Program-made: the position numbers and the translations under genes
DNA from: Histomonas meleagridis 2922-C6/04-290x
Taxonomy: Eukaryota; Protista; Parabasalia
Reading direction: 5' to 3'
Assembly: GCA_020184695.1 (NCBI GenBank)
Contig: JAANOX010000231.1
Location: forward strand, 186,001-250,000
DNA length: 64,000 nt
The notes under the pieces: model-generated
What the model saw: the letters and a program-made list of their open reading frames with translations, nothing else
Told to the model about the DNA's origin: nothing
Databases searched by the model: none
Shown: one piece after another, positions 2,362 through 62,371 of the stretch
Layout: every line of letters begins with the position of its first letter
Numbering within the stretch: the first letter of the stretch is position 1

Positions 2362-3432
2362 ATGAAAATATTTGATCATAATTTTCCATATTCTTTTAGT
2401 GTTTCTAATTGTTATCTTATTCGTTTAGCATTTTATTCTTTAAGAGGAGATGCAGACACTTATATAGAATACTTAAAATTAATACAAGAAAAAGAAGATG
2501 AAATTGGTATAAACATTAAACCAAAAAATTTTGAACTTTTTAGTCAACTTCTTTCATATAATCCCACAGAAGAATCATTTTATCTTCTTGAGAAAATGAT
2601 TGAACAAAATTTAATTGATACAAGTATTCCATTAAAAATAAAAACCAAATATTTTGCACATTACCAAACAATAAAAGAAAGCAAGCATTTGTATTTTTAT
2701 GATATTATCAAATTGCTTCTTCAACAAAAAGGAATTGATATTAATGCAAAAAATATTCATTTTTTTTTATTTAATATAAATTTTAATAATTTAATAATTC
2801 AAAATAATTTTTGGAAATTATTTAAATTATTTTATACAGCACTTATGAAAGCATCTGAATATGTTTATATAGAAATAGTTAGATTACTTCTTGAACAAGA
2901 AGGAATTGATATTAATGCAAAAGATATTTATTTGTTTTATTTAATATTTATTACAATTTTTTCTCAATATTTCAAAGTAATATTTGAAAATTATTTAAAT
3001 TATTTTATACAGCACTTATACTTGCATCTTCAAAAGGTAATAAAGGAATAGTTCAATTACTTCTTGAACAAGAAGGAATTGATATTAATGCAAAAGATAT
3101 TTATTTGTTTTATTTGTTTTTTATTTTCATGATTTGATATTTCAAAATAATATTTGAAAATTATTTAAATTATTCAATACAGCACTTATCTCTGAATCTG
3201 AAAGTGGTAACACAGAAATCGTTAAATTACTTCTTGAACAAGAAGGAATTGATGTTGACGCCGAAGATATTTTTTTGTTTTATTTAATATTTGTGTTGAT
3301 AGTTTGATATCATAAAATAACATTTGGAAATTATTTAAATTATTTTGGACAGCACTTATGAAAGCATCTGAATATGGTTATATAGAAATAGTTAAATTAC
3401 TTTACGAGAAAGGTTCTAAAGAAAATATTTAG
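2362..3432 (+). pseudogene. Internally deleted DUF3447-type/ankyrin repeat gene with 4 hairpin inserts (69, 71, 68, 68 nt)
   Basis: N-terminus is homologous to the 4677/11237/45782 genes but joins directly to ankyrin repeats (TALMKASEYGYIEIVKLLLEQEGIDINAKD). Inserts at 2764-2832, 2935-3005, 3108-3175, 3278-3345. No in-frame ATG for the upstream homologous segment. Confidence 0.7.
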
Positions 3433-3981
3433 ATATCGACGAACGTGATGTTTCCTCATTATGACCACACAAATGAATCAGTATACTATAATACATAAAA
3501 TTTTCTAAGAATTTTTTTTTGCATTAGATGTATCTTTTACATGAAAATTAGGAATCATCAAAATTATGTAATTAAAATTTATGAAAGCAATGAGATAAGC
3601 AGATAAATTTAAATGAAATAATTTTCTTTAAAGAAATAACTTGTATCATGGAATATTTTTATTGAGAACATATTATCCGAAAAGTTGAATTGAACATATC
3701 GGTGTTATTTTTCTTGAATTTTTTTCCCAGAGCATTTTGAAGATGTGTTCAAACACTTTCGGTTGAAGTTCTTCTTGTTTCTATCAATTAATATATTTTA
3801 CCACAAGATCTTTTGTTTCTTAGGCTTAAAAGAAAGGATTGATTGTGGCTTAATTAAACAATTGCAAATTTAAATTCGAACATCGATTTAAAGAATATGA
3901 AATATATATTGCTTGAAATCATTAGAATCTTATTTCATTTAAATGAATTTGAAAAAATTAACAATTAAAATAAAAGTCAAA

Positions 3982-11236: not shown

Positions 11237-14119
11237 ATGAATGAATGTATCAGTGGGAGCAGCGAACCTTCATCTCTCAAACAAATATTGAAAATACTAA
11301 ATTCTATTCAGCAAATTATTTATCATTTAAAACAAGAAAATCTTGAATCATCAGTTCAACAAACAACTCAATTATTTGACACAACTCCATCATGTTTATT
11401 AAACTTTATCATTTGTCATATAGTTTATTCATCATTTTTTTCTCAAAGAAATAAATTTGATATCTATGAAGAATATTTAAAATTGATTCAATCAAAAGAA
11501 GCGGAAATAAATGAAAGTTCATCGAAAATCTTTAAAATTTTGCTTAATTATATTTTAACTATAAAATCACAAGAAGCAGATTATATAATCAATAATATGA
11601 TTGAACATAATTTGTTTAATCCTAAAATTGTTCAAAACATTAGAAATCCATATTTTGTACATTATATGAAAAAAGAAGATATAAAAAAATATGGTTTTCT
11701 TGAAGACATTACCAGTATCTTCGCCAATACTGAAGAGCTTTCAAAGAACAATTTTGCGATTCACAAAAAATTAATTAGAGAAGGACATAATCCGAATGAA
11801 ATTGCGAAAATAATTCGAAATGATGAAATAGAAAAACTTCAAGAAATATCGTCACAAACAAATTTTAATTTTAATCAAACAATTGATCCATCAGTTTATG
11901 AAAGATGTTCATTCATTAATCAATATAATGTCACATTAATTGATTATGCAGCATTTTTTGGATCAATCAAATGTTTTAAATTTTTGCTTATGAATGGTGC
12001 AAATGTAAATAACACAGGTAAATATGCAGTTGCAGGTGAAAACAAAGAAATTATTCATTTATGCGAACAAAATCATTCAACATTTGAAAATGCATATGAA
12101 ACTGCAATTATGTTTCATTTAAATAATATCTTTAAATATCTTTATGAAAATAAAATTGAAGAAATTAATAACTTAGAACAATTAGGAAAGGTATGTATTA
12201 TATGTGATAATTATGAAATTTTTTTTTTTTACTTCAAGAAGGTATGAAAATAAATGATGATATTATAAATGAAGCAGCAATTGATGGAAATATATTTCTC
12301 ATTAAACATTTTCATGAAAGTTGCCAACTTCCAAAAGATATTTTAGTTTACTCAGCAGAGTCAGGAAACATTGAACTTGTAAAATATATTTTAGAACAAA
12401 AAATAAATGATATTAACACTAAAAATGATATTGATTCCATTAATTTGAAATACATATTTTATATTTGGAAATTATTTAAGATATTTAGCACAGCACTTGT
12501 ACTTGCTTCTGAATTTGGTTATACAAAAATTGTGAAATTACTTCTTGAACAAAAGGGAATTGATATTAATGCTAAAGATGATATTAATTTTGATAATTTT
12601 ATATTTCAAAATAGAATTTGGAAATTATTTCAATTATTTACAGCAGCACTTAGAGGAGCATCTCTTTGTAATCATAAAAAAATAGTTAAATTACTTCTTG
12701 ATCAAAAAGGAATTGAAATTAATGATAAAGATATCTATATGTTTTATTTGATATTAAATTTAATAATTTTATATTTCAAAATAATATTTGGAAATTATTT
12801 AAATTATTTGATACAGCACTTATTTTAGCATCTCAAAATGGTCATACAGAAATAGTCAAATTACTTCTTGAACAAGAAGGAATTGATATTAATGCTAAAG
12901 ATATTTATTTGTTTTATTTAATATTTATTTTAATAATTTCATGTTTCAAAATAATATTTGGAAATTATTTAAACTATTTAGAACAGCACTTATATGGTCA
13001 TCTTTAAATGGTTATTCAGAAATCGTTAAATTACTTCTTGAACAAGAAGGAATTGAAATTAATTCTAAAGATATTTATATGTTTTATTTGATATTAAATT
13101 TAATAATTTCATGTTTCAAAATAATATTTGGAAATTATTTAATTTGTTTAAAACAGCACTTATGAAGGCATCTTTAAATGGTTATTCAGAAATAGTTAAA
13201 TTACTTCTTGATCAAAAAGGAATTGATATCAATGCTAAAGATATTCATATGTTTTATTTGATATTATTTTTAATAATTTAATATTTTAAAACAATGTTTG
13301 GAAATTATTTCAAATATTCAAAACAGCACTTATATGTACATCTGAAAAAGGTCACACTGAAATAGTTAAATTACTTCTTGAACAAGAAGGAATTGATATT
13401 AATGCTAAAGATATTTATTTGTTTTATTTATAATTTATTTTTATAATTTTATATTTCAAAATAATATTTGGAAATTATTTAAATTATTTAATACAGCACT
13501 TATATGGGCATCTAAAAATGGTAATACAGAAATAGTCAAATTACTTCTTGAACAAAAAGGAATTGATATTAATGCTAAAGATATTTATTTGTTTTATTTA
13601 ATATTTATTTTAATAATTTCATGTTTCAAAATAATATTTGGAAATTATTTAAACTATTTAGAACAGCACTTATTTTAGCATCTTGGAAAGGTCGTACAGA
13701 AATAGTTAAATTACTTCTTGAACAAGAAGGAATTGATATTAATGCTAAAGATATTTATTTGTTTTATTTAATATTTATTTTAATCAATTAATTTTTCACA
13801 ATCATACTTGGGATTTATTCAAAACTTAGAATACATCACTTATTATTTCAGTTGGGAGAAATCATATTGAAATAGTTCAGTCACTTCTTACACAAAAAAG
13901 AATTGATATTAATGCTAAAAATATTTATATGTTTTATTTGAAATTTATTTTAATAATTTGATGTTTAAAAATAATATTTGGAAATTATTTAACACATTTT
14001 GGACAGCATTGATGATAGCTATTGATGAAGGTAATGAAGATATAGTTAAACTACTTCTTAAGCAAGAAGGAATTGATGTTGTTAAAAAGAATATTATTTT
14101 GTTTTATTTAACGATTTGA
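11237..14119 (+). CDS. DUF3447 + ankyrin repeat protein interrupted by 10 hairpin inserts (2 x 51 nt, 8 x 68 nt); one -1 frameshift in a T12 run
   Basis: Removing 12436-12486, 12589-12639, 12742-12809, 12912-12979, 13082-13149, 13252-13319, 13422-13489, 13592-13659, 13762-13829 and 13932-13999 and adding one T at 12219-12230 gives one ORF of 746 codons with 34-aa ankyrin repeats. Confidence 0.8.
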
Positions 14120-33505: not shown

Positions 33506-34681
33506 ATGAAAGCTGCTATAAAAGCAATTAATGACGAAGATGAAGATGCATTCAAAAATGCACTAGAACAGATTAATGATATTAATGCAGTTTTTCTTTG
33601 TTTTTTGGAGTATATTTGTTTTATTGAATATTTCTTTTTTTTGAATCGAAATCACTCCTTTATCTTGCCACAGAAAAAAAATCAATACCAATTGTTAAAA
33701 TCATTCTTGAAAAAAATCCTAATCCTAATCAATTAAATGTTCTTTAATTAATTATGCAAATGTTTTTTTGTTTTAATTGGTATTGCACCATTACACTTAG
33801 CTACAGAAAACACAGAATTATTTAAGTTGCTTTTCGAAAAAGGCGGTGACTGTAATCTTAGAGATAGTATTAATTAATTTAATTTCATGTTTCTTTTCTA
33901 TTATTCAAATTTCTTTATGTTTAACCAAAGACACCAATTTTTTATGCTGTTGATAACAATAATAAAGAATTAGTTCATTTCCTACTTGAAAATGGTAGTG
34001 AAGCAAATGTTACATGTAATGACAAAATTTATTTAATTTATAACGAACACCTCTTCATGATGCAGCTGAACGCGGAAACATAGAAATTGCTACTGCTCTT
34101 ATTGATAAAGGGTGCGATGTTAATGCGCAAAATTGGGTTTAAATCATTTTTTTAATTTTTCTATCACGTTTACAATACAACGCCTTTACATCTTGCAGCT
34201 CAATACGGAAGGTTTGAAATGATCGAATATCTTCTTTCAAAAGGTGCTTTTATTGATGCACAAGACCAACAAATTTGATTATTCGTTTTGGTGTTAATTA
34301 ATTTTTTAACGAACTCCACTTCATTTGGCAGCTGCAAATAATTACGGCGAAATATGTCAATACTTAATTAGTTCTGGTTGTGATCATACGATTACAAATA
34401 ACGAAGGAATTACTGGTGTTGATGCAGCACCTCCAACATTACGTAAAGAATTAACAGATTTCGTCATAAACAATTTGATGAACAAATCGCGTGGGATTGA
34501 AATAAGTTCATCAAATGCAGGAATTTGTGTATTTTGTCAAAGTGAAAATGCAGAATATGTATTTTTGCCTTGTCAACATGTTTCTCTTTGTTCAAAGTGT
34601 TATCAAGATAATAAGGATAAATTAAAGTTCTGCCCAATGTGCCGAAAGACTCTTAGTTCAGTCCAAAAAATACAAGAATAA
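33506..34681 (+). CDS. Ankyrin repeat + C3HC4 RING (IAP/MIB-type) E3 ligase with 6 hairpin inserts
   Basis: Removing 33597-33640, 33745-33778, 33875-33927, 34027-34043, 34137-34170 and 34274-34307 gives 320 codons with APLH, TPIF, TPLH, TPLH, TPLH repeats and CVFC...PCQH...CSKC...CPMCR. Confidence 0.85.
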
Positions 34682-41953: not shown

Positions 41954-44900
41954 ATGAGCAATTCAAGCGATAATTCAAATAATGATTCCAAAAGTAAAAA
42001 TTTTATTAAAAAGCACATGAAGTTAATCATTATTGGAAGTGTCGTAATTGTTTTAATATTGATCATTATTATTGTTATTGCTGTTGTTGTTAAAAAGCAA
42101 TCAGATATTGGTGATGTTGATGATACTGAAGATACCTCTTTTAAGCCATCTACATTTGAGCAGTTACCAGCTTCAAAGATTAATACAAATCTTCAAAAAT
42201 GGACAAAGATGCGTCTAGTCAACCAGGAACAATATGAAAATGGTAATGCTGGTGGAGAGGGATGTCAGTGGCCAACAAGTCTTGCCTGTGATTCTGATGA
42301 CGGAAATTTTATTCTATATGGAACCGATGTTTCAGGGTTTTGGAAATCTCTTGATGGGGGAATTACCTGGTTTCAATCCAACAATGGGCACAAAAGTTGC
42401 GGAGTAGGTAGTATAGCCATTGATCCCAAGAATAAGAATCATGTAGTTACAGTTGGCAATGGGGGTAAGTTTGAATCTGGAATTGAGTACTCGTATGACC
42501 AAGGACAAACATGGAATCGTAAGCAAAAATTTTCAGGAATTTATGGATCACGTTATCTTCGTGACAGCTTAGCATTTGATCCATCATCATATGATTCTGA
42601 AAAAGGCATTTGCATGCGTGTTTATTTTTCTACGCCATATCAATTAGATTGTGACATTCGCAATGGCGAAAACTTAAATCCTGTAAAAAGTGCCAATAAT
42701 TTGTTCAATGAAACAACTTCAGGCTTTTATATCAGCACTGATGGTGGTGAAACATTTGTTCAACAGACTACTTTAGCCCCTGATGGTATTATCCGGGTTA
42801 GCAAAGATGGTAATTATTTATTTATCGGAACTCAAAAAGGTGTATATTATTCAAATGACCATGGCAAAAGCCTTCAAAAATTATCGCATTTCCAAGATGA
42901 TGAGATTTCAGGAATTGACTTAGTTGATAACAACTTATATGTCCAAACCTTTAATGGAATATGGCTTTCCACAGATTATGGCAGCACATTTACTGAAATC
43001 ACATTAGGTAGTAACTACCCAACATCCAAAATGGCGCAAGCACTAAAAGTTTGTCCTATCAACATATCGCGCATGGCCATCACAGCACGAAATGTTGAAA
43101 CTGTTTACTATCAAACCTTTTTATATTACTCACATGATTCCGGCAAAACATGGAACAAATGGACTTATGACCGAACATCATTTTTTCATTTTGGTGATTC
43201 CAATTGCGATGCTCGCGAGAAAGTTATCATATGGAATCCGATTAACCAAGACAAGCTCCTCACGTTTGGCGTTGACAATTTGTTGATGTCAACTGACGGA
43301 GGAATTCGATGGCATTCGCCCGGACAAATCTCAAACATAATGTTAGGTGCGAAATTAACGTTTAATTACTATGACACGACGCTGTTATCGTTTGGCGCGC
43401 AAGATTATCACGGCGCTTATACATTGAACGGAGGATTATATTGGATTCCATTCTTTAACATGCCGGGTAACCAGTACGGGCTATTCATGCCCGATGAGAA
43501 GACAGTCATCGGCACATCTCTAAAGTCGTGGAGTGATGGGTCTATACCAGAATTAACATTATCATTTGATGCTGGAAAAACTTCAAATTTAACAGGAAAA
43601 TATGTGAAAAGCGCACAAGAAAGAAGAAGCATACAAACGATTCAATCATTTAAAAACCCTGAGACAATTTTCGTGGGACAATATAAATCTATTGATAATG
43701 GAAAAACGTTCGAAATAATGAATGAATGTGATCAAGTGTTTTGTATGAACTTAATAGAGCCTCATGAAATTTATGGACAGAAAATTGGTGATCCTTATGT
43801 TATTGTATCTTATGACGAAGGAATTACTTGGAAAAAAGTTAACGAAAACAATCCTTTCCCTGATAAATGGGGGTCTGAGTGTACTTTTAAAGTATTTGAT
43901 ATGAGTTTTGATCAAGTTAATAGATTACTTTATGTCATATATTATACAAAGGGTAAATATGATTCAAAAGATATGGTTTGTATCGACGTTGATAGTGGCA
44001 ATGTTACATTTTTGACCGATAATATCCCAACTGATTATAGAGGATCAAGAAGAATTGATACATGTGTAGTAGATCCACATTATACTGATCTAATTTATAT
44101 CGGTGGCTCAGGAGATTACTTCCTAAATGATAAAAGCGTTTTAAGAAGCTTAGATAGAGGCAAAACATGGGAAGTTATAAATACCAATTCTGAAAACGAT
44201 CAAAATTTATTAGGTTCCTATGGACATCAAGTATACACCATTAGAATTAATTACACCAACGGTGAAGTATTGTTAGGGAGTTCTTGTTATGGTTTTTACA
44301 AACTTTCGCCCCCATATGACCCAAACGGTCTGAATGAAAAAGTGACATACCATAAAATTGTATACGTTACAAATGGCGGTGAGGAAATTCAATCGGATTT
44401 CATCGCAAACCGAAGATTTCTGAGGCCGATAACGCCGACCAAAAACGGTTTCGTATTTTTGGGGTGGTACAAAGATGAAGAACTAAGTGAACCTTTTGAT
44501 TTCGAAAATACTCATATAACAAACAGTATTAAGCTTTATGCAAAGTGGAGACAATCATTTTCTGTCACATTTATTGATATTGATGGAAAATTAATCGGGA
44601 AAGTTACACAAGATAACGAAGAACCAATTCAACAAATCGATCCACCATCGCATAGAGGCTATGTTTTTGCCAACTATTTTTATGACAAAGATATTACAAA
44701 AGAATTTGATCATATGATCGTCTTAGATGAAGACATTACACTATACGCTGGGTACTATAAGACACAGAACGAAACAATTTATCCAAATTCTGATGACTAC
44801 AATGGATATTTAGAATTTCGAAGTGATAATGTTTGCGTTCCTGTCTTTTTATACGACAATGAGACCAAGTACAAGTGTGACATTGATGAGGAAGTCAAAA

Positions 44901-45229
44901 ACAGAATAGTTCCCTTCATAGATATGGAATATCCAAAAAATTATTTAATCACAATGAAAATGGATACGCGGTTTAGAGGCGGCGTAACTGCCACAAATAG
45001 GCTACGCAAGTGGTGGCAGTTCAGTGGCACTGTTTTTGTGAACAAATATGATGTAAATGGTAACGTATCTGTGGGAAGGACACAGACGCAAGTAGTTAAT
45101 ACAACCAAAGATTGTCGGTCGATTTTGGTGTTTTATTATAGCGAAGAAGGAAATAGTAATTGGAAAGAAATCAGAAATACAATTCAATTGAATGAAATTG
45201 TCGACAGAAATATTTTGTTTGAATTGTAG
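41954..45229 (+). CDS. Type II membrane protein with BNR/Asp-box beta-propellers (GH74/sortilin-like) and Listeria-Bacteroides repeats
   Basis: N-terminal TM; repeated SxDGGxTW/F Asp-boxes (KSLDGGITW, ISTDGGETF, RSLDRGKTW); C-terminal YVTNGG...PTKNGFVFLGWYKD...KLYAKW repeat. Confidence 0.85.
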   Translation: MSNSSDNSNNDSKSKNFIKKHMKLIIIGSVVIVLILIIIIVIAVVVKKQSDIGDVDDTEDTSFKPSTFEQLPASKINTNLQKWTKMRLVNQEQYENGNAGGEGCQWPTSLACDSDDGNFILYGTDVSGFWKSLDGGITWFQSNNGHKSCGVGSIAIDPKNKNHVVTVGNGGKFESGIEYSYDQGQTWNRKQKFSGIYGSRYLRDSLAFDPSSYDSEKGICMRVYFSTPYQLDCDIRNGENLNPVKSANNLFNETTSGFYISTDGGETFVQQTTLAPDGIIRVSKDGNYLFIGTQKGVYYSNDHGKSLQKLSHFQDDEISGIDLVDNNLYVQTFNGIWLSTDYGSTFTEITLGSNYPTSKMAQALKVCPINISRMAITARNVETVYYQTFLYYSHDSGKTWNKWTYDRTSFFHFGDSNCDAREKVIIWNPINQDKLLTFGVDNLLMSTDGGIRWHSPGQISNIMLGAKLTFNYYDTTLLSFGAQDYHGAYTLNGGLYWIPFFNMPGNQYGLFMPDEKTVIGTSLKSWSDGSIPELTLSFDAGKTSNLTGKYVKSAQERRSIQTIQSFKNPETIFVGQYKSIDNGKTFEIMNECDQVFCMNLIEPHEIYGQKIGDPYVIVSYDEGITWKKVNENNPFPDKWGSECTFKVFDMSFDQVNRLLYVIYYTKGKYDSKDMVCIDVDSGNVTFLTDNIPTDYRGSRRIDTCVVDPHYTDLIYIGGSGDYFLNDKSVLRSLDRGKTWEVINTNSENDQNLLGSYGHQVYTIRINYTNGEVLLGSSCYGFYKLSPPYDPNGLNEKVTYHKIVYVTNGGEEIQSDFIANRRFLRPITPTKNGFVFLGWYKDEELSEPFDFENTHITNSIKLYAKWRQSFSVTFIDIDGKLIGKVTQDNEEPIQQIDPPSHRGYVFANYFYDKDITKEFDHMIVLDEDITLYAGYYKTQNETIYPNSDDYNGYLEFRSDNVCVPVFLYDNETKYKCDIDEEVKNRIVPFIDMEYPKNYLITMKMDTRFRGGVTATNRLRKWWQFSGTVFVNKYDVNGNVSVGRTQTQVVNTTKDCRSILVFYYSEEGNSNWKEIRNTIQLNEIVDRNILFEL

Positions 45230-45781: not shown

Positions 45782-48419
45782 ATGGATTTTCTCTTATCTC
45801 TAAAAAATATCATATTTGAATTAAAAGAAGATAATGTTACTTTAACAGTTCAAAAAGTCTTGGAATGTTTTGACCAAAATTATTCATATTCCTTTTGTTT
45901 AATAACTTGTAAAATTTTATTTTCTTTTTATTGCTCCCATGGCTATAATATAAATTTATTATTACAATTTTTAAGTACGCTTCATAAAAAATTTTATAAG
46001 AAATTTAATATAAATGTTAACAAAATTTTTGTAACAACTTTAAATCATTTTTACATCAAAAATGGTGCTAATTTTGTTTATGAACAAATGGATGAACGAA
46101 AAATGATTTCTTATAAATTTCTTAAAAGAAAACGTTCGATATATTTTATGCATTATAATAATATATTGTTTTATCCAACATATATACCTGACGAATTTGT
46201 TAGTTCATGGGAAATAGAGAATACATTTCGTTATGAAGCTAAAATAAATTATGAAGAACTATCTAAGAATGATTTTGAACTTCATAAGAAATTAATGAAA
46301 GAAGGAGTTAATCCAAGTGAAATATCGAAAATAATTCGAAATGATGATATAGAAAAACTTCAAGAAATATCATCACAAGCAAATTTTGATTTTAATCAAA
46401 CAATTAAACCATCACTTTATGAAAGATGTTCATTTATTAATGAAAGAAATGTTAAATTAATTGATTATGCAGCATTTTTTTCTTCAGTTAAATGTTTTAA
46501 ATATTTGCTTGTAAATGGTGCAAATATCAAATATACAGGTAAATATGCAGTTGCAAGTGGAAATGAAGAAATCATTCATTTGTGTGAACAAAATCATTCA
46601 TCATTTGAAGGTGCATATAAAGCAGCAATTGAATTTCATCGAAATGATATCTTTAAATATATATATGAAAATAAATTAGAAAAAATTGAAAATTTAAAAT
46701 ATCAGCTAAAAAATTTATGGATAGAATGTGTTTTATATAACAACTATGAAATCTTCAAATTTCTCCTTGAAGAAAACGAAATGACTTTTAATGAAACTTA
46801 TAATATTATTGCAAACGAAATTGCAGCAGATGGGAATTTATATCTCATTCAATATATATTAAAAGACAACAATATTCCTATAAATATACTTCTTTTTGCT
46901 ATAGAATCAGGAAACATAGAATTGTCGAAATATATTCTGATTAATCAAAAAGGATTTTATATTAATGCGATTGATTTTTTTGGATTTTAATTGAAGTATT
47001 TAGAACTGCGCTTATGTTAGAAACTATTAAAGGTAATGTAGAAATTGTTAAATTACTTCTTAAAAATGAAGAAATTGATATAAATATGAAAGACAGAATT
47101 TATATAAATAATTTGATATTTCAAAATAATATTTGGAAATTATTTAAAATATTTTTAACAGCACTTATGAAGGCCTCTCAAAGTGGTTCCACAGAAATAG
47201 TTAGATTACTTCTTGAACATAAAGGAATTGATGTTAATGCTAAAGATATTTATTTGCTTTATTTAAAATTTATTTTAATAATTTTATTTGTTTTATTTAA
47301 TATTTTTGAACGATTTTTGATAATTATTTAGAGAATTTAATATTTATTTGAGAAATTTGAAACAGCTATTATTTTTGCAATTAGAAATGGAAACTCACAA
47401 ATATTTAAAATGCTTCTTAATCAAAAAGGAATTGACATCAAAGTCAAAGATACAAATTATTTTGGCAATTTTTTGTTTCTAAATAATATTTAATATTAAT
47501 TTAATTTATTTATGTCATTGTTTTTAAGTGCAACTAGACAAGGCCTTCCAAAAATTATTAAATTACTTCTTAAACATGAAGAAATTGATATCAATGAAAA
47601 AAATATTTTAAAAGTTTTCATGAACTTTATATCAGCAATTTTATATTTCAAGTGATTATTTGGTATTAATCCCGATTTTTTTTGACAGCTCTTATAATAG
47701 CATCTTTAAAAGGACACACAAAAGTAGTCAAAGCACTTCTTAAACTAAAAGGAATTGATGTTAATGCTAGAGATGATGTTTATTTTTGTTGATTAATAAT
47801 TATTTTAATTATTTTTTGTTTTTTAATGATTTTTGGAATATATTTATAAAGTTTCAAACTGCTCTTATGAGAGCAGCTGCAAATGGTTATATTGGAATTG
47901 TCAAAATGCTTCTTGAACAAGAAGGAATCGATTTTAATGCGAAAGATAAAATTGATTATGATAATTTGATGTTTCAATATAATTTGTGGAGTTAACATTA
48001 AATATTTAGGACAACACTTATGAAAGCATCTGTTGGAGGTTATTTAGAAATAGTTAAATTACTTCTTGAACAGAAAGGAATTGATTTTAATGCTAAAGAT
48101 GATTTTTTGATTGATATAATATTTATACAATTTATTTAACATTTCAAATAATTTTTCGGAATTTATTTATGTGTTTTAGAACAGCGCTTATGGGTGCTGC
48201 TGAAAAAGGGAATTTAGAAATCGTCAAATTACTTCTTAAACAGAAAGGAATTGATTTTGATGCGAAAGATGATTTTTTAGGTTAATTAATTTTGATTATA
48301 ATTATTTTTCATTTAAAAAAAAATTTTGGAATTTATTCACAGTGTTTTGGTCAGCACTTATTTTTGCAACTCGTTATAGTCATCCAGAAATTGTTGAACT
48401 TCGAAATGAAAAAAGGTAA
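45782..48419 (+). CDS. DUF3447 + ankyrin repeat protein with 9 hairpin inserts (17, 51, 102, 51, 68, 71, 51, 68, 68 nt)
   Basis: Removing 46985-47001, 47104-47154, 47257-47358, 47461-47511, 47614-47681, 47784-47854, 47957-48007, 48110-48177 and 48280-48347 gives an uninterrupted 697-codon ORF. Confidence 0.85.
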
Positions 48420-48872
48420 ATGTTAAAATATTTCAGAAACACTTTGAAAATTGAATATAAAATAACCTCTCTATAAAAGAAAAAGAAAATAGCCAAAGAA
48501 TGATGCAATAGTTAATTACAGTAATGTAATAAAATAATTTAGTTTACATCCAAATTGTTAATTTTACATTAACATTTTCGTATAGTGTTGATTCAAAAAT
48601 TGTAATTTTATATTAAAAACCTTGCAAAGACAAAAAGGTATTTAACAAAACATTTATTCACAATGAACAATTGCTTAAAAAAAAAAAAATCAAAATTTTT
48701 CTCCGCAGTTTACAAATTTAACCGATTAGAATATTCAATGAAATACCACCACTTTTTCTGTTGAATGAGTTCACTTTTCTCTTTATGCTTTCTGTTGTTA
48801 AAACCGTGAGCCCAATGAAGCTGTTAAGCTTATAAGGTCAATAACTTCTGTAAAATTTTTAACAATGATATC

Positions 48873-49511
48873 TTATGATGTTATATCATTGTAATTATCA
48901 TCATCATCAAAAATCGGAAATTCCATTGAAATTCTGATCAGTTGTTTACGACAAATTGGACAAGGGTTTTTTTCTTTCCATATTTCACTTGCACAACTGT
49001 AACAACAACATTGATGACCGCAAGGAATAAATATGGCCGAACAATCATTTTCACAACAAACGACACACTTTGATTCAGGGAACACACGTACGGCTGCAGA
49101 GATGTGAACATTACAAAGTGGGCAAGTTTCTGATCTGTTTTTTGGAATTTTCTCGGAACATTTTGCACAAAATATTCTATGTCCACAAGGCACGCATATG
49201 TTCGTTGCTTCTTCCTTTTTGCATTTCATACACAAGCCTTTGCTATTACATTGCTTCATTTTCCCGATTGTTTGCTGAAAATCATCTTCTTTAAAAAATA
49301 TTTTTTGCGCAAGTGGTAAATCTGGTGGTACTTCTATTTTAGGTAAAGGTTCAATAGTTTTAAATGAAATTTGATTGAATAGTATTTCTGGAATTTCTGA
49401 TCTTTTTAAATTTTCTGCATTCATAACTAAGCGATACCCTCCGGGCACTCTTTGAGAGTGCTGACTTCCTGTTGTTTGATTTTGGTTATTTGGGTTTTGT
49501 GTCCTTTTCAT
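48873..49511 (-). CDS. Double C3HC4 RING protein (E3 ligase-like)
   Basis: CMKC...PCGH...CAKC...CPLC and CVVC...PCGH...CYSC...CPICR. Confidence 0.85.
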   Translation of the reverse strand: MKRTQNPNNQNQTTGSQHSQRVPGGYRLVMNAENLKRSEIPEILFNQISFKTIEPLPKIEVPPDLPLAQKIFFKEDDFQQTIGKMKQCNSKGLCMKCKKEEATNICVPCGHRIFCAKCSEKIPKNRSETCPLCNVHISAAVRVFPESKCVVCCENDCSAIFIPCGHQCCCYSCASEIWKEKNPCPICRKQLIRISMEFPIFDDDDNYNDITS

Positions 49512-50623
49512 TTTGTATAAAAAATGCCGAACCACTTGGAAAGTGATATCAAAAAATGATTTTTTTATAAAAACTTTAAAAAAAACTTTGTAAAAAATTT
49601 AAATAGATATTAAAATTATTGGAAGCAAGTTCTTGGAGGACATAAAAGATGAGATACATCTTGTTTTTTCAGGAATAAATGCCACATTTGGAGCATCTTT
49701 TTCAGCTACCGTCAAAAGCCCTCACCAAAAAATCCTAACGTAAGCGGTTATTGATTCAAATTTTTCTTCCATTCAGAATATTCATAGAAAAATGTCAGAA
49801 TATTTATATAACGTTTTTTTATACGTAAAAACCTCCATTTTGAACTTTTTGTTTTTCTGAGATTTATTATAAAAAAATTGACTCTTCAATCATTTTGCTT
49901 CTTTGTCAGAATTGTAGTTGCTTTCAATCATTGACTCAATTTTATGACTTAACTTAAGTTCTATTACATTATACCAAATTTTTTTTTTAATATTCCAAAA
50001 TTTATTCCAATTCCTTACATCAAATTAAAAAGTCATAACTTATATAAACATTATTTATGTAAAGTTATATCATTTGACAATATTTCTTTAAGAATCTGTA
50101 GACTGAGTATATATAAACATTACAAAATTTTATATTTTAACATGTATGAATTATTTTTTTTTAAAAATTCATGCTTCTCTTTAAGTCAATTATCATCAAA
50201 TTTGGATCTCTTAAGATATATAGATTTTATAAGTAACATTTTATATTTTGAGTTATTATGGTAAAAATGCATTTTTTTTCAAAAATCAAAAGATATTTAA
50301 TTTAAAATAAGTGGAATATGTTCGCCTTGAATCGTACTGCTTTTATCTGTGATAATACCTTATTAAAAATTTATCAGAGAAAAATCAAATTCGTCAACAA
50401 AAAATTGTTTATTTTAGAGTAAAAAAATGTGTTATCAGGAATGTTACTATAAAATTGAATTCTTTGTTTAAATTTTAATTTACAAATATTTACAAATATT
50501 TATTATCATTATTTCGAGTTGTAAACAGAAAATTAAGAAAAAGATTTGAAATCAATTTTGAACATATTAATTATTTTGATTTAATTTGGAAAATTATATC
50601 ACGTAACTAAATCAAATTGGCTT

Positions 50624-51046
50624 TTACTTCAAAGATGTTGCAGATGAGCTACGAGTTGCACCAACACCAGCTTTGCTGTGTTTAACAATCTTCTTGCTCA
50701 TTGCGAAATCAGCAAGAACATGGCCAATCATTTCTGGTTTGATTTGAACTTCGACAAATTCTTTGCCGTTATAGATACCGATTATGTTATCAACAAATTC
50801 TGGAAGAACAACCATTGATCTTAAGTGTGTTTTGACAACAGGTGGCTTTTCTCCTGGGCCCTTAACAGCTTCACGAGCCTTTTTAAGTTTAGTGATAAGG
50901 TGAAGATGTTTAACTCCGAAACAACGTGAGATATAACGCCTGCGTGGTGCTGAAAGAAGTTTGACAAATTCTGGAAGTTCCATGGCCTTGAGGTCATCGA
51001 GTGTTTTACCACGGAATGTATAGTTACGTTGTGCAAATTTGGACAT
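50624..51046 (-). CDS. RPS15: 40S ribosomal protein S15 (uS19)
   Basis: YTFRGKTLDDL...VKTHLRSMVVLPE...YNGKEF...IKPEMIGHVLADF. Confidence 0.96.
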   Translation of the reverse strand: MSKFAQRNYTFRGKTLDDLKAMELPEFVKLLSAPRRRYISRCFGVKHLHLITKLKKAREAVKGPGEKPPVVKTHLRSMVVLPEFVDNIIGIYNGKEFVEVQIKPEMIGHVLADFAMSKKIVKHSKAGVGATRSSSATSLK

Positions 51047-51138
51047 TCTCCAAAAATGGTATGACCACAGACAAACCGATAAAACCGAAATTTGATAAAC
51101 GGTCTTATTAAACGGTCACCAACTAACGTTTTTTCCTG

Positions 51139-52437
51139 ATGTCTTCCATCGAAAAGAAAGCTTTTAAGTTATGCTGCCAAGGGAATGAAGAATTATTTAA
51201 TCCAATTGTACCATCACAAGTTCCAATAAATTGTCAAATACAAAATGTTTATATCTTTTTTACTGATTGAAATTAACCACATAAATCTTGAATATCCATC
51301 ATTTTTACATGCTGCAACTATGCACCAAAAAGCAAAAATGGTTCAACTTCTAATTGATCTCGGAATTAACTTAAATTTACGTGACATTAATATTTTTCAT
51401 TTCGAAATGATCCATAAAAATTTTTGGTGTTTTTTATATTTTTTTCAAACAGCTGCTTGTTTAGCATGTATAAATGGGTTTAAACAAATTCTTAAAATTC
51501 TTATTGATGCAGGAGCTGATATTTTTCTTAATGATTACAATGGAATTTAAATCATTTTTATTTTGCGCCAATTCATTTAGCAGCATTACATAATCAAAGA
51601 CCATGTTTAGAACTTCTAATACAAAACGGGGCTAATCCAACAGCACATAATATTTATTTATAATATATTTTGTTTCTTTTCTTTTTTAATGTGTTTTCTT
51701 TTAATTTTTCTTGTATCATTTTTAATATTTCGTGAACCAATTCATTGTGCAGCACGAATGGGTAATAATCAAATCATTGATTATTTAGTTTCACTTGGTG
51801 CTAATATTAATGCACAAACAATGGATGGTAGAACACCTTTGTTTGAAGCATGTTGTGCAACTGATGAAGAGTCAAAACAAGTCGGACGTATTTCTACTGT
51901 TTCGATTCTACTTAAATATGGTGCAAATCCTTTAATTAGTGATTTATCTGGAAATTTTTCAAATTATTTAGAACACCACTTCATTGGGCATGCTATTATG
52001 GACATGAAAAAGTTATACATAAATTATTACGTAAGATGAATGATAATATTTCAGATATAGTAGATATTAATTTGAATTTTTGGATGTTTATTTAATAATT
52101 TCGAAGTTTTTTTTAATGTTTATGGTGTGACTCCTTTTCATCTTGCTTGCTTTTCAGGTAATATTAATATTTGTCAATTATTACTTGAAAAAGGGGCAAA
52201 TGTAAATGCACAAGATAAATATATGATTTGTTTATGTCTTAAAGAACACCAATGCATTATGCTGCTCGTGCTATTGCAAAAGATGTTATTAAGTTGTTAC
52301 TTGATAATCATGCAAATCCAGATGTGATAGATGACGCAGGTGAAACACCTATGTCACTTAATGAAGGAATGACCGAAATACAAGAAATTATTCAAAGACA
52401 TTCTGAACAAAATCGGAAAAAACTTGACTCAAGGTGA
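51139..52437 (+). CDS. Ankyrin repeat protein with 7 hairpin inserts and two insert-free repeats
   Basis: ATG at 51139. Removing ~51247-51280, 51395-51445, 51545-51561, 51661-51730, 51953-51969, 52081-52114 and 52226-52242 gives 353 codons with SFLH, TAAC, APIH, EPIH, TPLF, TPLH, TPFH, TPMH repeats. Confidence 0.8.
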
Positions 52438-61861: not shown

Positions 61862-62371
61862 ATGCCTCGTAGGTTACGTAGACGTAGTTATTCACGTGGA
61901 CATCCACTGAAGACTGTAAAGTACCCCAATGAGACATATAATAGTTCCGGTCCTATTAGTTTTAATGTAGGTGAAGGTGAGCAAGCAGTTGGTGATCAAG
62001 TATCAGCTACCTTGATTAGTGCTGCATCTCAAGGTATGCGTAAAGTGAAGAATTTTACTTTGAAAATGATTACAGATATTTCAATTCCAGTCCTTTGGGC
62101 CTTGGTATATGTACCTGATGGTACTGTAATAAAAAACATTAGTTTGGGTACCCATGCTGCCCCTGTTTCATTATATGAACCCAATCAAAATGTTATCTTG
62201 TCAGGGTACGTTACCCCTAATGCTGCACAAACTCAAGTATTTCGTACTAGGTTAGCACGTAATTTGAATTCTGGTCATAGTATTGCTTTGGTTCTTCGAT
62301 TGGCAATACAAGGTACTGTTATTAATCAGAAGTTCTTAGGTGTTCAATTAAATTATGCAGTTACTTATTAA
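61862..62371 (+). mobile_element. Endogenous viral element: CRESS-DNA-virus-like capsid gene
   Basis: 169-aa intact ORF with Arg-rich N-arm (MPRRLRRRSYSR), beta-rich body (QGMRKVKNFTL, WALVYVP, SLYEPNQNVI, RLARNLNSG, LNYAV) and higher GC than its flanks. Recognised from memory, not searched. Confidence 0.65.

What the first reader, a model, noticed from the sequence alone, without database searches (positions are those of the whole stretch)
46985..47001. Five minimal 17-nt inserts: at the lower size limit of known introns and without GT-AG
TTTTAATTGAAGTATTT (46985; removal gives the consensus-like DFFG|RTAL), ATTTATTTAATTTATAA (34027), ATTTAAATCATTTTTAT (51545), AATTTTTCAAATTATTT (51953; DLSG|RTPLH) and ATTTGTTTATGTCTTAA (52226; DKYM|RTPMH). 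Each shifts the frame by 2 nt, so the downstream repeats cannot be translated unless it is removed. Boundaries are ambiguous by 1-3 nt because of T/A microhomology; starts fit (A)TTT and ends fit TTT or TAA. Established: the shortest spliceosomal introns (Stentor, 15-16 nt) are still GT-AG.
Basis: partly seen in the sequence, partly recalled or inferred. Interest (0 to 1): 0.8.

Follow-up and report, generated by a model that had tools for sequence, protein, structure and literature searches.

The report
17-base micro-introns in ankyrin genes
In a gut parasite that is most likely Histomonas meleagridis, ankyrin-repeat genes are peppered with 17-base U-rich pieces that are cut out of the RNA although they lack the near-universal GT-AG intron ends, often leaving exons only one codon long, which looks like an undescribed kind of intron.

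Summary
Confirmed, and bigger than reported. All five 17-nt inserts are in the sequence. Poly(A) RNA contigs lack exactly 17 nt at 46985, 51545, 51953 and 52226. DNA contigs keep the insert at the two sites they cover (46985, 51545).

The five are the simplest cases of a system covering every ankyrin gene in the window. Distances between repeat cores are 12 + n x 17 nt (13 of 18 gaps, p about 7e-13). RNA removes 35, 51, 52, 68 and 70 nt from the long inserts.

The best model is arrays of 17-nt (rarely 18-19, 34-35) introns separated by single-codon exons. It yields open reading frames with canonical D-x-x-G-x-T loops. In one gene these match residues of orthologues that have no intron there.

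Consensus is RUUURUUU...RUUU. The 5' end is GU in relatives (all GU in GC-rich ones) and mostly AU here. The 3' end is almost never AG. No branch motif or RNA structure was found.

The enzyme is unknown. I favour a derived spliceosome that measures length; a nuclease-ligase ruler is not excluded. No description was found in the literature searched. Other first-stage readers of this scan noted the same pattern elsewhere in this genome.

The parts
46985..47001 (+). 17-nt micro-intron TTTTAATTGAAGTATTT in gene G4 (DFFG|RTAL)
   Evidence: RNA contig in X3 lacks exactly these 17 nt; DNA run X1 keeps them (0 of 518.7 depth with the deletion).
34027..34043 (+). 17-nt micro-intron ATTTATTTAATTTATAA in gene G3 (CNDK|RTPLH); predicted
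   Evidence: Orthologue L005 has the 17-nt GTTTGTTTTGCATTTAT at the same site. Orthologues L007-L010 have no insert there and read CND(K/N)R(T/S)PLH. RNA word shares of 0.43-0.50 fit absence from the RNA.
51545..51561 (+). 17-nt micro-intron ATTTAAATCATTTTTAT in gene G5 (NDYNG|FAPIH)
   Evidence: Left out in X4 (113.3 of 113.3) and X5 (22.4 of 22.4); DNA run X1 shows 0 of 522.5 with the deletion.
51953..51969 (+). 17-nt micro-intron AATTTTTCAAATTATTT in G5 (DLSG|RTPLH); can slide +1
   Evidence: The X4 record 20 and X5 record 26 pieces over 51729-52065 carry a 17-nt gap. Not in the 'left out' table, so no DNA comparison.
52226..52242 (+). 17-nt micro-intron ATTTGTTTATGTCTTAA in G5 (DKYM|RTPMH); can slide +1
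   Evidence: Left out in X4 and X5 at full depth. DNA run X1 has no depth here.
45782..48419 (+). Gene G4: DUF3447 + 9 ankyrin repeats, about 31 micro-introns by the model
   Evidence: Pfam. Gaps are 29, 63, 114, 80, 83, 63, 80, 80 nt. The model gives an open 700-aa frame with loops such as DRDGLT, DKDGRT, DNNGRT.
48271..48350 (+). 80-nt gap of G4: gat | 34 nt | ttc | 17 nt | gga | 17 nt | tgg (micro-exons of 3 nt)
   Evidence: RNA contig X3 record 12 runs to 48275, then has 4 unplaced letters, then restarts at 48348 (68 nt removed). Only decompositions with at least 3 excisions and exons of 1-3 nt fit.
33506..34681 (+). Gene G3: ankyrin-RING protein, 13 predicted micro-introns (11 of 17 nt, 2 of 19 nt) at six loops
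   Evidence: Removing them gives a 317-aa ORF colinear with orthologues. The single-codon exons CAT, CAA, AAG encode H-Q-K, as in orthologues that have no intron there.
51278..52437 (+). Gene G5: ankyrin protein with 11 micro-introns; one loop (about 51815, NAQTMDGRTPLF) has none
   Evidence: X4 record 20 (1122 nt, 0-1 mismatches) is the processed RNA. The model gives an open frame.
51386..51445 (+). Triple unit in G5: 17 | cgaaat | 17 | ggt | 17
   Evidence: RNA keeps 8 letters of 51386-51444, so 51 nt are removed. Enumeration; best reading D-R-N-G-Q-T.
51655..51728 (+). Two 35-nt units around a 3-4-nt exon (tgtg) in G5
   Evidence: X5 record 26 lacks only 51655-51689 and keeps 51690-51728, so it is partly processed. 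X4 lacks 70 nt in total.
52066..52123 (+). Triple unit in G5: 17 | gat | 17 | gaa | 18
   Evidence: RNA keeps 6 letters, so 52 nt are removed. Enumeration; best reading D-D-E-G-V-T.
12244..14100 (+). Gene G2: tandem 170-nt pitch (90-nt core + 80-nt gap = 4 x [17 + 3]); some 153-nt units lack the first 17-mer
   Evidence: No RNA laid here.
2362..3500 (+). Gene G1: same 170-nt architecture (gaps 83, 80, 80)

Best explanation
The inserts are genuine intervening sequences removed from the pre-mRNA. They form a lineage-specific class of fixed-length micro-introns.

Each unit is 17 nt (sometimes 18-19; a few 34-35-nt double-length units). It is U-rich, starts R-U-U-U(R-U-U-U) and usually ends R-U-U-U. 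In relatives the first base is G; in this genome it is mostly A. The 3' end carries no AG and varies between orthologues (UUU, CAA, CAU, UAA, UCC).

I therefore infer that the 5' RUU start plus a measured distance of about 17 nt sets the cut sites. One to six units sit in the beta-hairpin loop between ankyrin repeats, and neighbouring units are typically separated by one codon. After processing, those codons spell the D-x-x-G-x-T loop. Units can be removed independently.

Shown: removal from RNA, retention in DNA, quantised lengths, a partly processed form, conservation of position and length in related species.

Inferred: single-codon exons (from contig block arithmetic, orthologue colinearity and the ankyrin consensus) and the rule of 5' signal plus ruler.

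Open: the enzyme. I put about 50% on a derived spliceosome working in strict intron-definition mode at its minimal intron size, about 30-35% on a non-spliceosomal nuclease and ligase, and the rest on something else.
For: - RNA lacks 17 nt at four sites, and 35, 51, 52, 68 and 70 nt from the long inserts. DNA keeps the insert at the two sites it covers. A partly processed contig exists.
- Gap lengths are 12 + n x 17 nt.
- Position weights from 56 unique units: R1 91%, T2-4 79-95%, R14 79%, T15-17 86-91%, AG at the 3' end in 1 of 56. In relative L002: G1 71%, AG 0 of 24.
- Orthologous loci share the loop positions and the lengths (17/17/19 in two species). These are L005 and L007-L011; L008 also shares the downstream kinase gene, so synteny is seen there.
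- In GC-rich relatives, T-rich 17-18-mers all start GTT and are split by a GGC or GGT codon.
- Removing the units gives open frames colinear with orthologues and with canonical ankyrin loops.
- The T. foetus homologue is uninterrupted.
Against: - Exact junction letters inside the long inserts were not seen. Only contig block coordinates were, so the single-codon exons rest on inference.
- One predicted 34-nt unit (51244-51277) is retained in the only RNA contig covering it.
- RNA runs X5 and X3 also hold unspliced words of G3.
- The 35-nt units do not fit a simple single-ruler rule.
- The relatives' introns have no RNA support.
- Against the spliceosome sub-reading: no AG; A at +1 in most units; two predicted units in GC-rich relatives contain no adenosine at all; and the parabasalid branch/3' motif (ACTAAC...AG; PMC12316389) is absent.
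Confidence: 0.78

Rival explanations
1. The same RNA-level excision, but performed by a spliceosome-independent nuclease and RNA ligase (tRNA-splicing or RtcB-like, or a new enzyme). It would bind a U-rich stretch of about 17 nt and cut both ends at a fixed spacing.
For: - No AG, and A at +1 tolerated.
- Some predicted units have no A to serve as branch point.
- Exons of 3 nt are hard to reconcile with usual spliceosome footprints.
- Both ends carry the same RUUU word.
- The length is typical of tRNA introns (my own knowledge).
Against: - No bulge-helix-bulge or stem-loop signal. The consensus fold of 17 aligned 80-nt gaps is empty, and local folding energy equals shuffles (mean z 0.03).
- GU is at the 5' end in all 11 units of the GC-rich relatives L007-L010 and in the 9 units parsed in the AT-rich relative L005 (GC 31%). 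A U-rich body also looks like a reduced spliceosomal intron.
Confidence: 0.3
2. The ankyrin arrays are decaying pseudogenes, and the 17-nt gaps in the RNA contigs are artefacts of assembly or of reverse-transcriptase template switching.
For: The sequence is AT-rich and repetitive. The evidence is contigs rather than reads. The X3 contig over 46985 differs from the window at 9 bases.
Against: - The same exact deletions appear in two RNA runs at full contig depth, with 0-1 mismatches.
- Every removal restores the frame.
- Lengths are quantised across 30 or more gaps.
- Cores stay open and conserved while position and length are kept across species of 31-58% GC.
- No flanking direct repeats that would drive template switching.
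Confidence: 0.02
3. The inserts are removed at the DNA level, or the RNA comes from insert-free gene copies elsewhere in the genome.
For: Microhomology at some junctions. Ciliate eliminated sequences also show quantised lengths (my own knowledge).
Against: - DNA runs X1 and X2 hold the insert-bearing form at single-copy depth. No DNA contig has the deletion where DNA covers the site (0 of 518.7 and 0 of 522.5).
- DNA runs hold 1.00 of the words of the G3 stretch.
- A partly processed RNA form exists.
Confidence: 0.03
4. The inserts stay in the mRNA and are skipped by the ribosome through bypassing or frameshifting.
For: Proposed by another first-stage note (s1-304777). Bypassing is known for phage T4 gene 60 and for yeast mitochondrial byps (my own knowledge).
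Against: The polyadenylated RNA contigs already lack the inserts, so no bypass is needed.
Confidence: 0.01

Closest known systems
Minimal spliceosomal introns of ciliates (heterotrichs such as Stentor, about 15-16 nt; karyorelicts, 17-nt mode) and of the Bigelowiella nucleomorph (18 nt and up)
   Same: Very short. The length distribution is extremely narrow, suggesting a machine working at its size limit. The introns are AT-rich and removed from RNA.
   Different: Those are GT-AG and occur genome-wide in all kinds of genes. These have R at +1 (mostly A here) and no AG. They stack in arrays with 3-nt exons and, as far as seen, occur only in ankyrin-repeat loops.
Parabasalid spliceosomal introns, especially Trichomonas type B (23-28 nt)
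   Same: Same phylum. Short, with GT plus a poly-T body. The relatives' micro-introns start GTT(T/C) (PMC12316389).
   Different: Type B introns keep GT/AG and a (T)CTAA branch site fused to the 3' motif, with one, rarely two, introns per gene. Here both 3' signals are missing, and a single gene carries 11-31 units.
Micro-exons of animals (3-27 nt) and plants (1-15 nt)
   Same: Exons of a single codon are included constitutively (PMC7935315, PMC8831610).
   Different: Known micro-exons lie between long canonical introns and need special enhancers. Here 3-nt exons alternate with 17-nt introns in tandem.
Recursive splicing and nested or abutting introns (ratchet points, stwintrons)
   Same: Long intervening stretches are removed in several steps, and some units abut with no exon between them (partly processed contig).
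   Different: Known cases regenerate canonical GT or AG sites. None is present here. (Comparison from my own knowledge.)
Structure-defined non-spliceosomal introns: archaeal/tRNA bulge-helix-bulge, HAC1/XBP1 (IRE1 + RtcB), euglenid non-conventional introns
   Same: No GT-AG. Small size (XBP1 26 nt; tRNA introns 14-20 nt).
   Different: All of these depend on a defined RNA fold. No conserved or above-chance structure is seen here.

Membership tests
U2-type spliceosomal intron | Absent from mature RNA, present in DNA | tested here: met
   17-nt deletions in RNA runs X3, X4 and X5. DNA run X1 shows 0 depth with the deletion at 46985 and 51545.
U2-type spliceosomal intron | GU at the 5' end | tested here: not met
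   None of the 4 RNA-proven units starts GT. Of 56 unique units in this window, 7 are GT and 32 AT. In relatives GT dominates: 13 of 24 in L002, 11 of 11 in GC-rich orthologues, and all 9 units parsed in L005.
U2-type spliceosomal intron | AG at the 3' end | tested here: not met
   1 of 56 units here and 0 of 24 in L002. The RNA-proven sites cannot be slid to AG.
U2-type spliceosomal intron | Branch site (in parabasalids ACTAAC fused to the 3' motif) and lariat formation | tested here: inconclusive
   The motif is absent (against PMC12316389). Two predicted units in GC-rich relatives have no A. Lariats cannot be tested with these tools.
U12-type AT-AC intron | 5' ATATCC and 3' AC | tested here: not met
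   Units start ATTT or AATT and end TTT, TAA or TAT.
Bulge-helix-bulge (tRNA-endonuclease) intron | Two 3-nt bulges around a 4-bp helix formed with the flanking exons | tested here: not met
   No consensus pairs in 17 aligned gaps. The minimum free energy of 40 unit contexts equals that of shuffles (z 0.03).
IRE1-type (HAC1/XBP1) intron | Twin stem-loops with conserved loop motifs at both cut sites | tested here: not met
   No stable local stems, and no G/C-containing loop motif in AU-only junctions.
Euglenid non-conventional intron | Intron ends brought together by a stable secondary structure; variable length | tested here: not met
   No structure. The length is fixed at 17-19 nt.
Programmed DNA elimination (IES-like) | Sequence absent from the DNA of the expressing nucleus | tested here: not met
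   DNA runs hold the inserts at single-copy depth, and no deleted form is seen where DNA covers the site.
Translational bypass or programmed frameshift | Insert retained in the translated mRNA | tested here: not met
   Poly(A) RNA contigs lack the inserts.
Constitutive micro-exons | Exons of 3 nt or less kept between two removed segments | tested here: inconclusive
   Supported by contig block arithmetic, by synonymous GGA/GGC/GGT between T-rich units in five species, and by H-Q-K colinearity. The junction letters themselves were not seen.

The most novel reading that the evidence does not exclude
A second mRNA excision system in a eukaryote. The machine would be either spliceosome-independent or a spliceosome so remodelled that it needs neither a 3' AG, nor G at +1, nor a branch adenosine. 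It would recognise an RUU start, measure about 17 nt, and operate processively on arrays separated by single codons. This would have allowed explosive intron gain inside one repeat family in the Histomonas lineage.
Probability: 0.35. Interest if true: 0.95.

Novelty: new variant of a known kind. Interest (0 to 1): 0.88.

Why it matters
- These would be the first well-supported large set of mRNA introns that ignore the AG rule and largely the GT rule while sitting at the minimal intron size. They would also be the densest known use of single-codon exons.
- They give a natural system for asking how a splicing machine can define sites by length alone, how introns multiply inside repeats, and how far spliceosome chemistry can drift, or whether another enzyme does the job.
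- Practically, the published genome (PMC8529796; most likely this organism's) reports about 570-640 introns and at most one per gene. Three genes in this window alone need about 55.
- The large ankyrin family is therefore annotated as truncated stubs. Paralogues in the public H. meleagridis record are named 'caskin' and cover only the N-terminal ORF.

Tried and rejected
- **A 9-nt micro-exon** (ATATTTGGA, reading I-F-G) between a 51-nt and a 17-nt intron. Rejected because the RNA block coordinates of 48271-48350 and 51386-51444 do not fit it, and because the single-codon model gives far better ankyrin loops and orthologue colinearity.
- **Sliding boundaries to GT or AG.** Impossible at the RNA-proven sites.
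- **Structure-based recognition.** The alignment fold is empty and folding z-scores are null.
- **Scan of the whole window** for 17-mers of the form [AG]TT...TTT whose removal fuses long ORFs. Only a few chance-like hits outside ankyrin genes. Housekeeping ORFs (actin-like, peroxiredoxin, eIF2B, kinase) are uninterrupted.
- **Rfam on the window.** Nothing, so no snRNA to inspect.
- **Two metagenome scans for more orthologues.** Patterns matched, but no confirmed locus.
- **Exhaustive protein search with a 74-aa exon,** hoping for an RNA-derived full-length product. It was swamped by giant ankyrin proteins.
- **Two word-index protein searches.** They gave paralogues and orthologues but no RNA-derived product of these genes. 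The actual junction letters of the long inserts therefore stayed out of reach.
- **Literature.** Seven searches found no description.
Full report
**Source.** The window has 22-38% GC. It carries DUF3447-ankyrin and BspA-type LRR genes, which are hallmarks of parabasalids. The nearest named proteins are from Histomonas meleagridis. That genome's published features (43 Mb, 28% GC, two strains sequenced in 2021) match the run metadata. I treat the organism as H. meleagridis or a very close relative.

**Observation.** Laying contigs of three RNA runs and one DNA run on 46500-52400 gave:
- an exact 17-nt omission at 46985 in X3;
- exact 17-nt omissions at 51545 and 52226 in X4 and X5, at full contig depth;
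- a 17-nt gap in the pieces covering 51953.

The DNA run keeps the inserts at the two sites it covers (0 of 518.7 depth with the deletion at 46985, 0 of 522.5 at 51545). It has no depth at 52226, and 51953 is not in the deletion table.

The RNA runs behave as poly(A) RNA. They show poly-T loose ends at the 3' end of the minus-strand gene at 50623, and X3 and X4 have no depth in the intergenic stretch 49849-50242. The X4 contig over G5 differs from the window at 0-1 bases.

Three RNA runs from two studies hold 0.43-0.50 of the sampled words of 33995-34335. That is the share expected if all inserts there are missing from the RNA. DNA runs hold 1.00, and two RNA runs also hold unspliced words.

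**The wider pattern.** In every ankyrin gene of the window, each repeat core (T-A/P-L ... D) is followed by an AT-rich gap. Measured from the D codon to the next T codon, the gaps are:
- G4: 29, 63, 114, 80, 83, 63, 80, 80 nt;
- G3: 65, 23, 46, 46 nt;
- G5: 63, 29, 82, 29, 64, 29 nt;
- the tandem arrays G1 and G2: 80 nt, sometimes 63 or 83.

Thirteen of the 18 gaps in the three diverged genes equal 12 mod 17 (p = 6.5e-13). The RNA contigs remove 51, 70 and 52 nt from the three long G5 gaps and 68 nt from the last G4 gap. One X5 contig has lost only 35 nt (51655-51689) and still carries the next 39 nt. Processing is therefore modular and happens at the RNA level.

**Anatomy.** Notes by other first-stage readers suggested single-codon exons, so I re-parsed the gaps as 17 + 3 repeats. 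An 80-nt gap then reads, for example, ATTTATTTGTTTTATTT aat ATTTATTTTAATAATTT cat GTTTCAAAATAATATTT gga AATTATTTAAACTATTT aga. That spells D-N-H-G-R-T, the ankyrin loop consensus. Three lines of evidence support this parse.

(i) Contig block arithmetic. For 48271-48350 the RNA contig matches up to 48275, then has 4 unplaced letters, then restarts at 48348. Every decomposition consistent with that needs at least three excisions and exons of 1-3 nt. The natural one is gat | 34 | ttc | 17 | gga | 17 | tgg.

(ii) Orthologues of the ankyrin-RING gene G3. These came from metagenome and Logan contigs (L005, L007-L011). L008 shares the downstream kinase gene, so synteny is seen there. They carry inserts at the same loops. 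In GC-rich relatives (52-58% GC) the inserts stand out as T-rich 17-18-mers. All of them start GTT, and they are split by a Gly codon that varies synonymously (GGC, GGT; GGA in AT-rich species).

(iii) Open reading frames. Removing 13 units (11 of 17 nt, 2 of 19 nt) from G3 gives a 317-aa frame colinear with those orthologues. The single-codon exons CAT, CAA, AAG encode H-Q-K, exactly as in orthologues with no intron there (PDGHQKEPIFYAVD). CNDKRTPLH likewise matches at 34027. The same rule gives open frames for G5 (11 units) and G4 (31 units), with loops such as DKDGRT and DNNGRT.

**Signals.** Across 56 unique units:
- position 1 is a purine in 91% (A 75%, G 16%);
- positions 2-4 are T in 79-95%;
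- position 5 is a purine;
- the middle is A-rich;
- position 14 is a purine in 79%;
- positions 15-17 are T in 86-91%;
- the 3' dinucleotide is AG once.

A paralogous family in another species (L002) has six gaps of exactly 80 nt, G at +1 in 71% and no AG. Orthologous units keep their position and length across species but not their 3' ends (UUU, CAA, CAU, UCC, UAA). At several orthologous units this genome has A where L005 has G at +1. RNA-proven units start with A or T, so A at +1 is functional here. No conserved or above-chance RNA structure exists. A T. foetus homologue is an uninterrupted 661-aa ORF. Non-ankyrin genes in the window are intact ORFs.

**Mechanism.**
- Shown: RNA-level excision of quantised units.
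- Inferred: the conserved 5' RUU(U) plus a distance of 17 nt (sometimes 18-19) sets the sites, since nothing else is conserved and orthologous 3' ends drift.
- For a spliceosome: the GU start in relatives, the U-rich body and the razor-thin length spectrum recall minimal spliceosomal introns and Trichomonas type B introns.
- Against a spliceosome: the missing AG and branch motif, A at +1, A-less predicted units, and 3-nt exons.
- A nuclease-ligase ruler remains possible, but it cannot be of the structure-recognising kinds known.
- The 35-nt units, and one 34-nt unit retained in RNA (51244-51277), are not explained.

**Origin.** This is inference. Tandem duplication of a unit, or of a unit plus its codon, is neutral if each copy is excised. 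That would explain stacks, the 170/153-nt pitches differing by exactly one unit, and spread through repeat amplification.

**Novelty.** Seven full-text searches found no description. The genome paper reports scarce introns, at most one per gene. Other first-stage readers of this scan noted the same pattern on other pieces of this genome, but none of those notes had been followed up.

**Limits.** The evidence comes from contigs, not reads. Junction letters of the long inserts were not seen. 34027 is supported only indirectly. The relatives have no RNA data. The enzyme is unknown.

Noticed in passing
window 51244-51277: A 34-nt AT-rich stretch splits the 5' ORF of G5 (MSSIEKK...IQN) from the first ankyrin repeat. 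It is retained in the only RNA contig covering it (X4 record 20, colinear over 51099-51385). Either this unit is poorly removed or the protein starts at a later ATG (about 51321).
   Followed up: partly
window 12225-12250: In gene G2 the DUF3447 part and the following part (…EIFFF / LLQEGMK…) are in different frames across a long T run. This could be a homopolymer assembly error, a pseudogene or something else. It is not a 17-nt unit.
   Followed up: no
window 47452-47529: Irregular 78-nt gap before a repeat that lacks its TALxx start (SATRQGLPK...). The units there fit the RUUU...RUUU consensus poorly. An RNA contig (X3 record 11) leaves the genome at 47454.
   Followed up: partly
window 41954-45226: A 1091-aa ORF with BNR/sortilin-type repeats and Listeria-Bacteroides repeat domains (Flg_new). 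It looks like a bacterial-type surface protein in a eukaryotic genome and is a candidate lateral transfer.
   Followed up: no
window 61862-62368: A 169-aa ORF that another first-stage note calls a CRESS-virus-like capsid. Pfam gave no hit at E <= 0.001.
   Followed up: partly
window 33995-34335 (RNA runs X5, X3): RNA run X5 holds 100% and X3 holds 75% of the words of the unprocessed G3 stretch. Either unspliced RNA is abundant or there is DNA carry-over. X5 also shows faint intergenic depth.
   Followed up: no
L003 5300-6500: In the public H. meleagridis contig, a long uncalled ORF (about 390 codons, frame 2) lies between a truncated DUF3447 gene annotated as 'caskin' and the next interrupted ankyrin array. 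It may be a mobile-element gene. Not tested.
   Followed up: no
L005 2372-2402: One orthologous unit can be read either as a 19-nt non-AG unit followed by AAG (matching a 19-nt unit in this genome) or as a 22-nt GT...CTAAG intron. It could be a link between the micro-introns and canonical short introns.
   Followed up: partly
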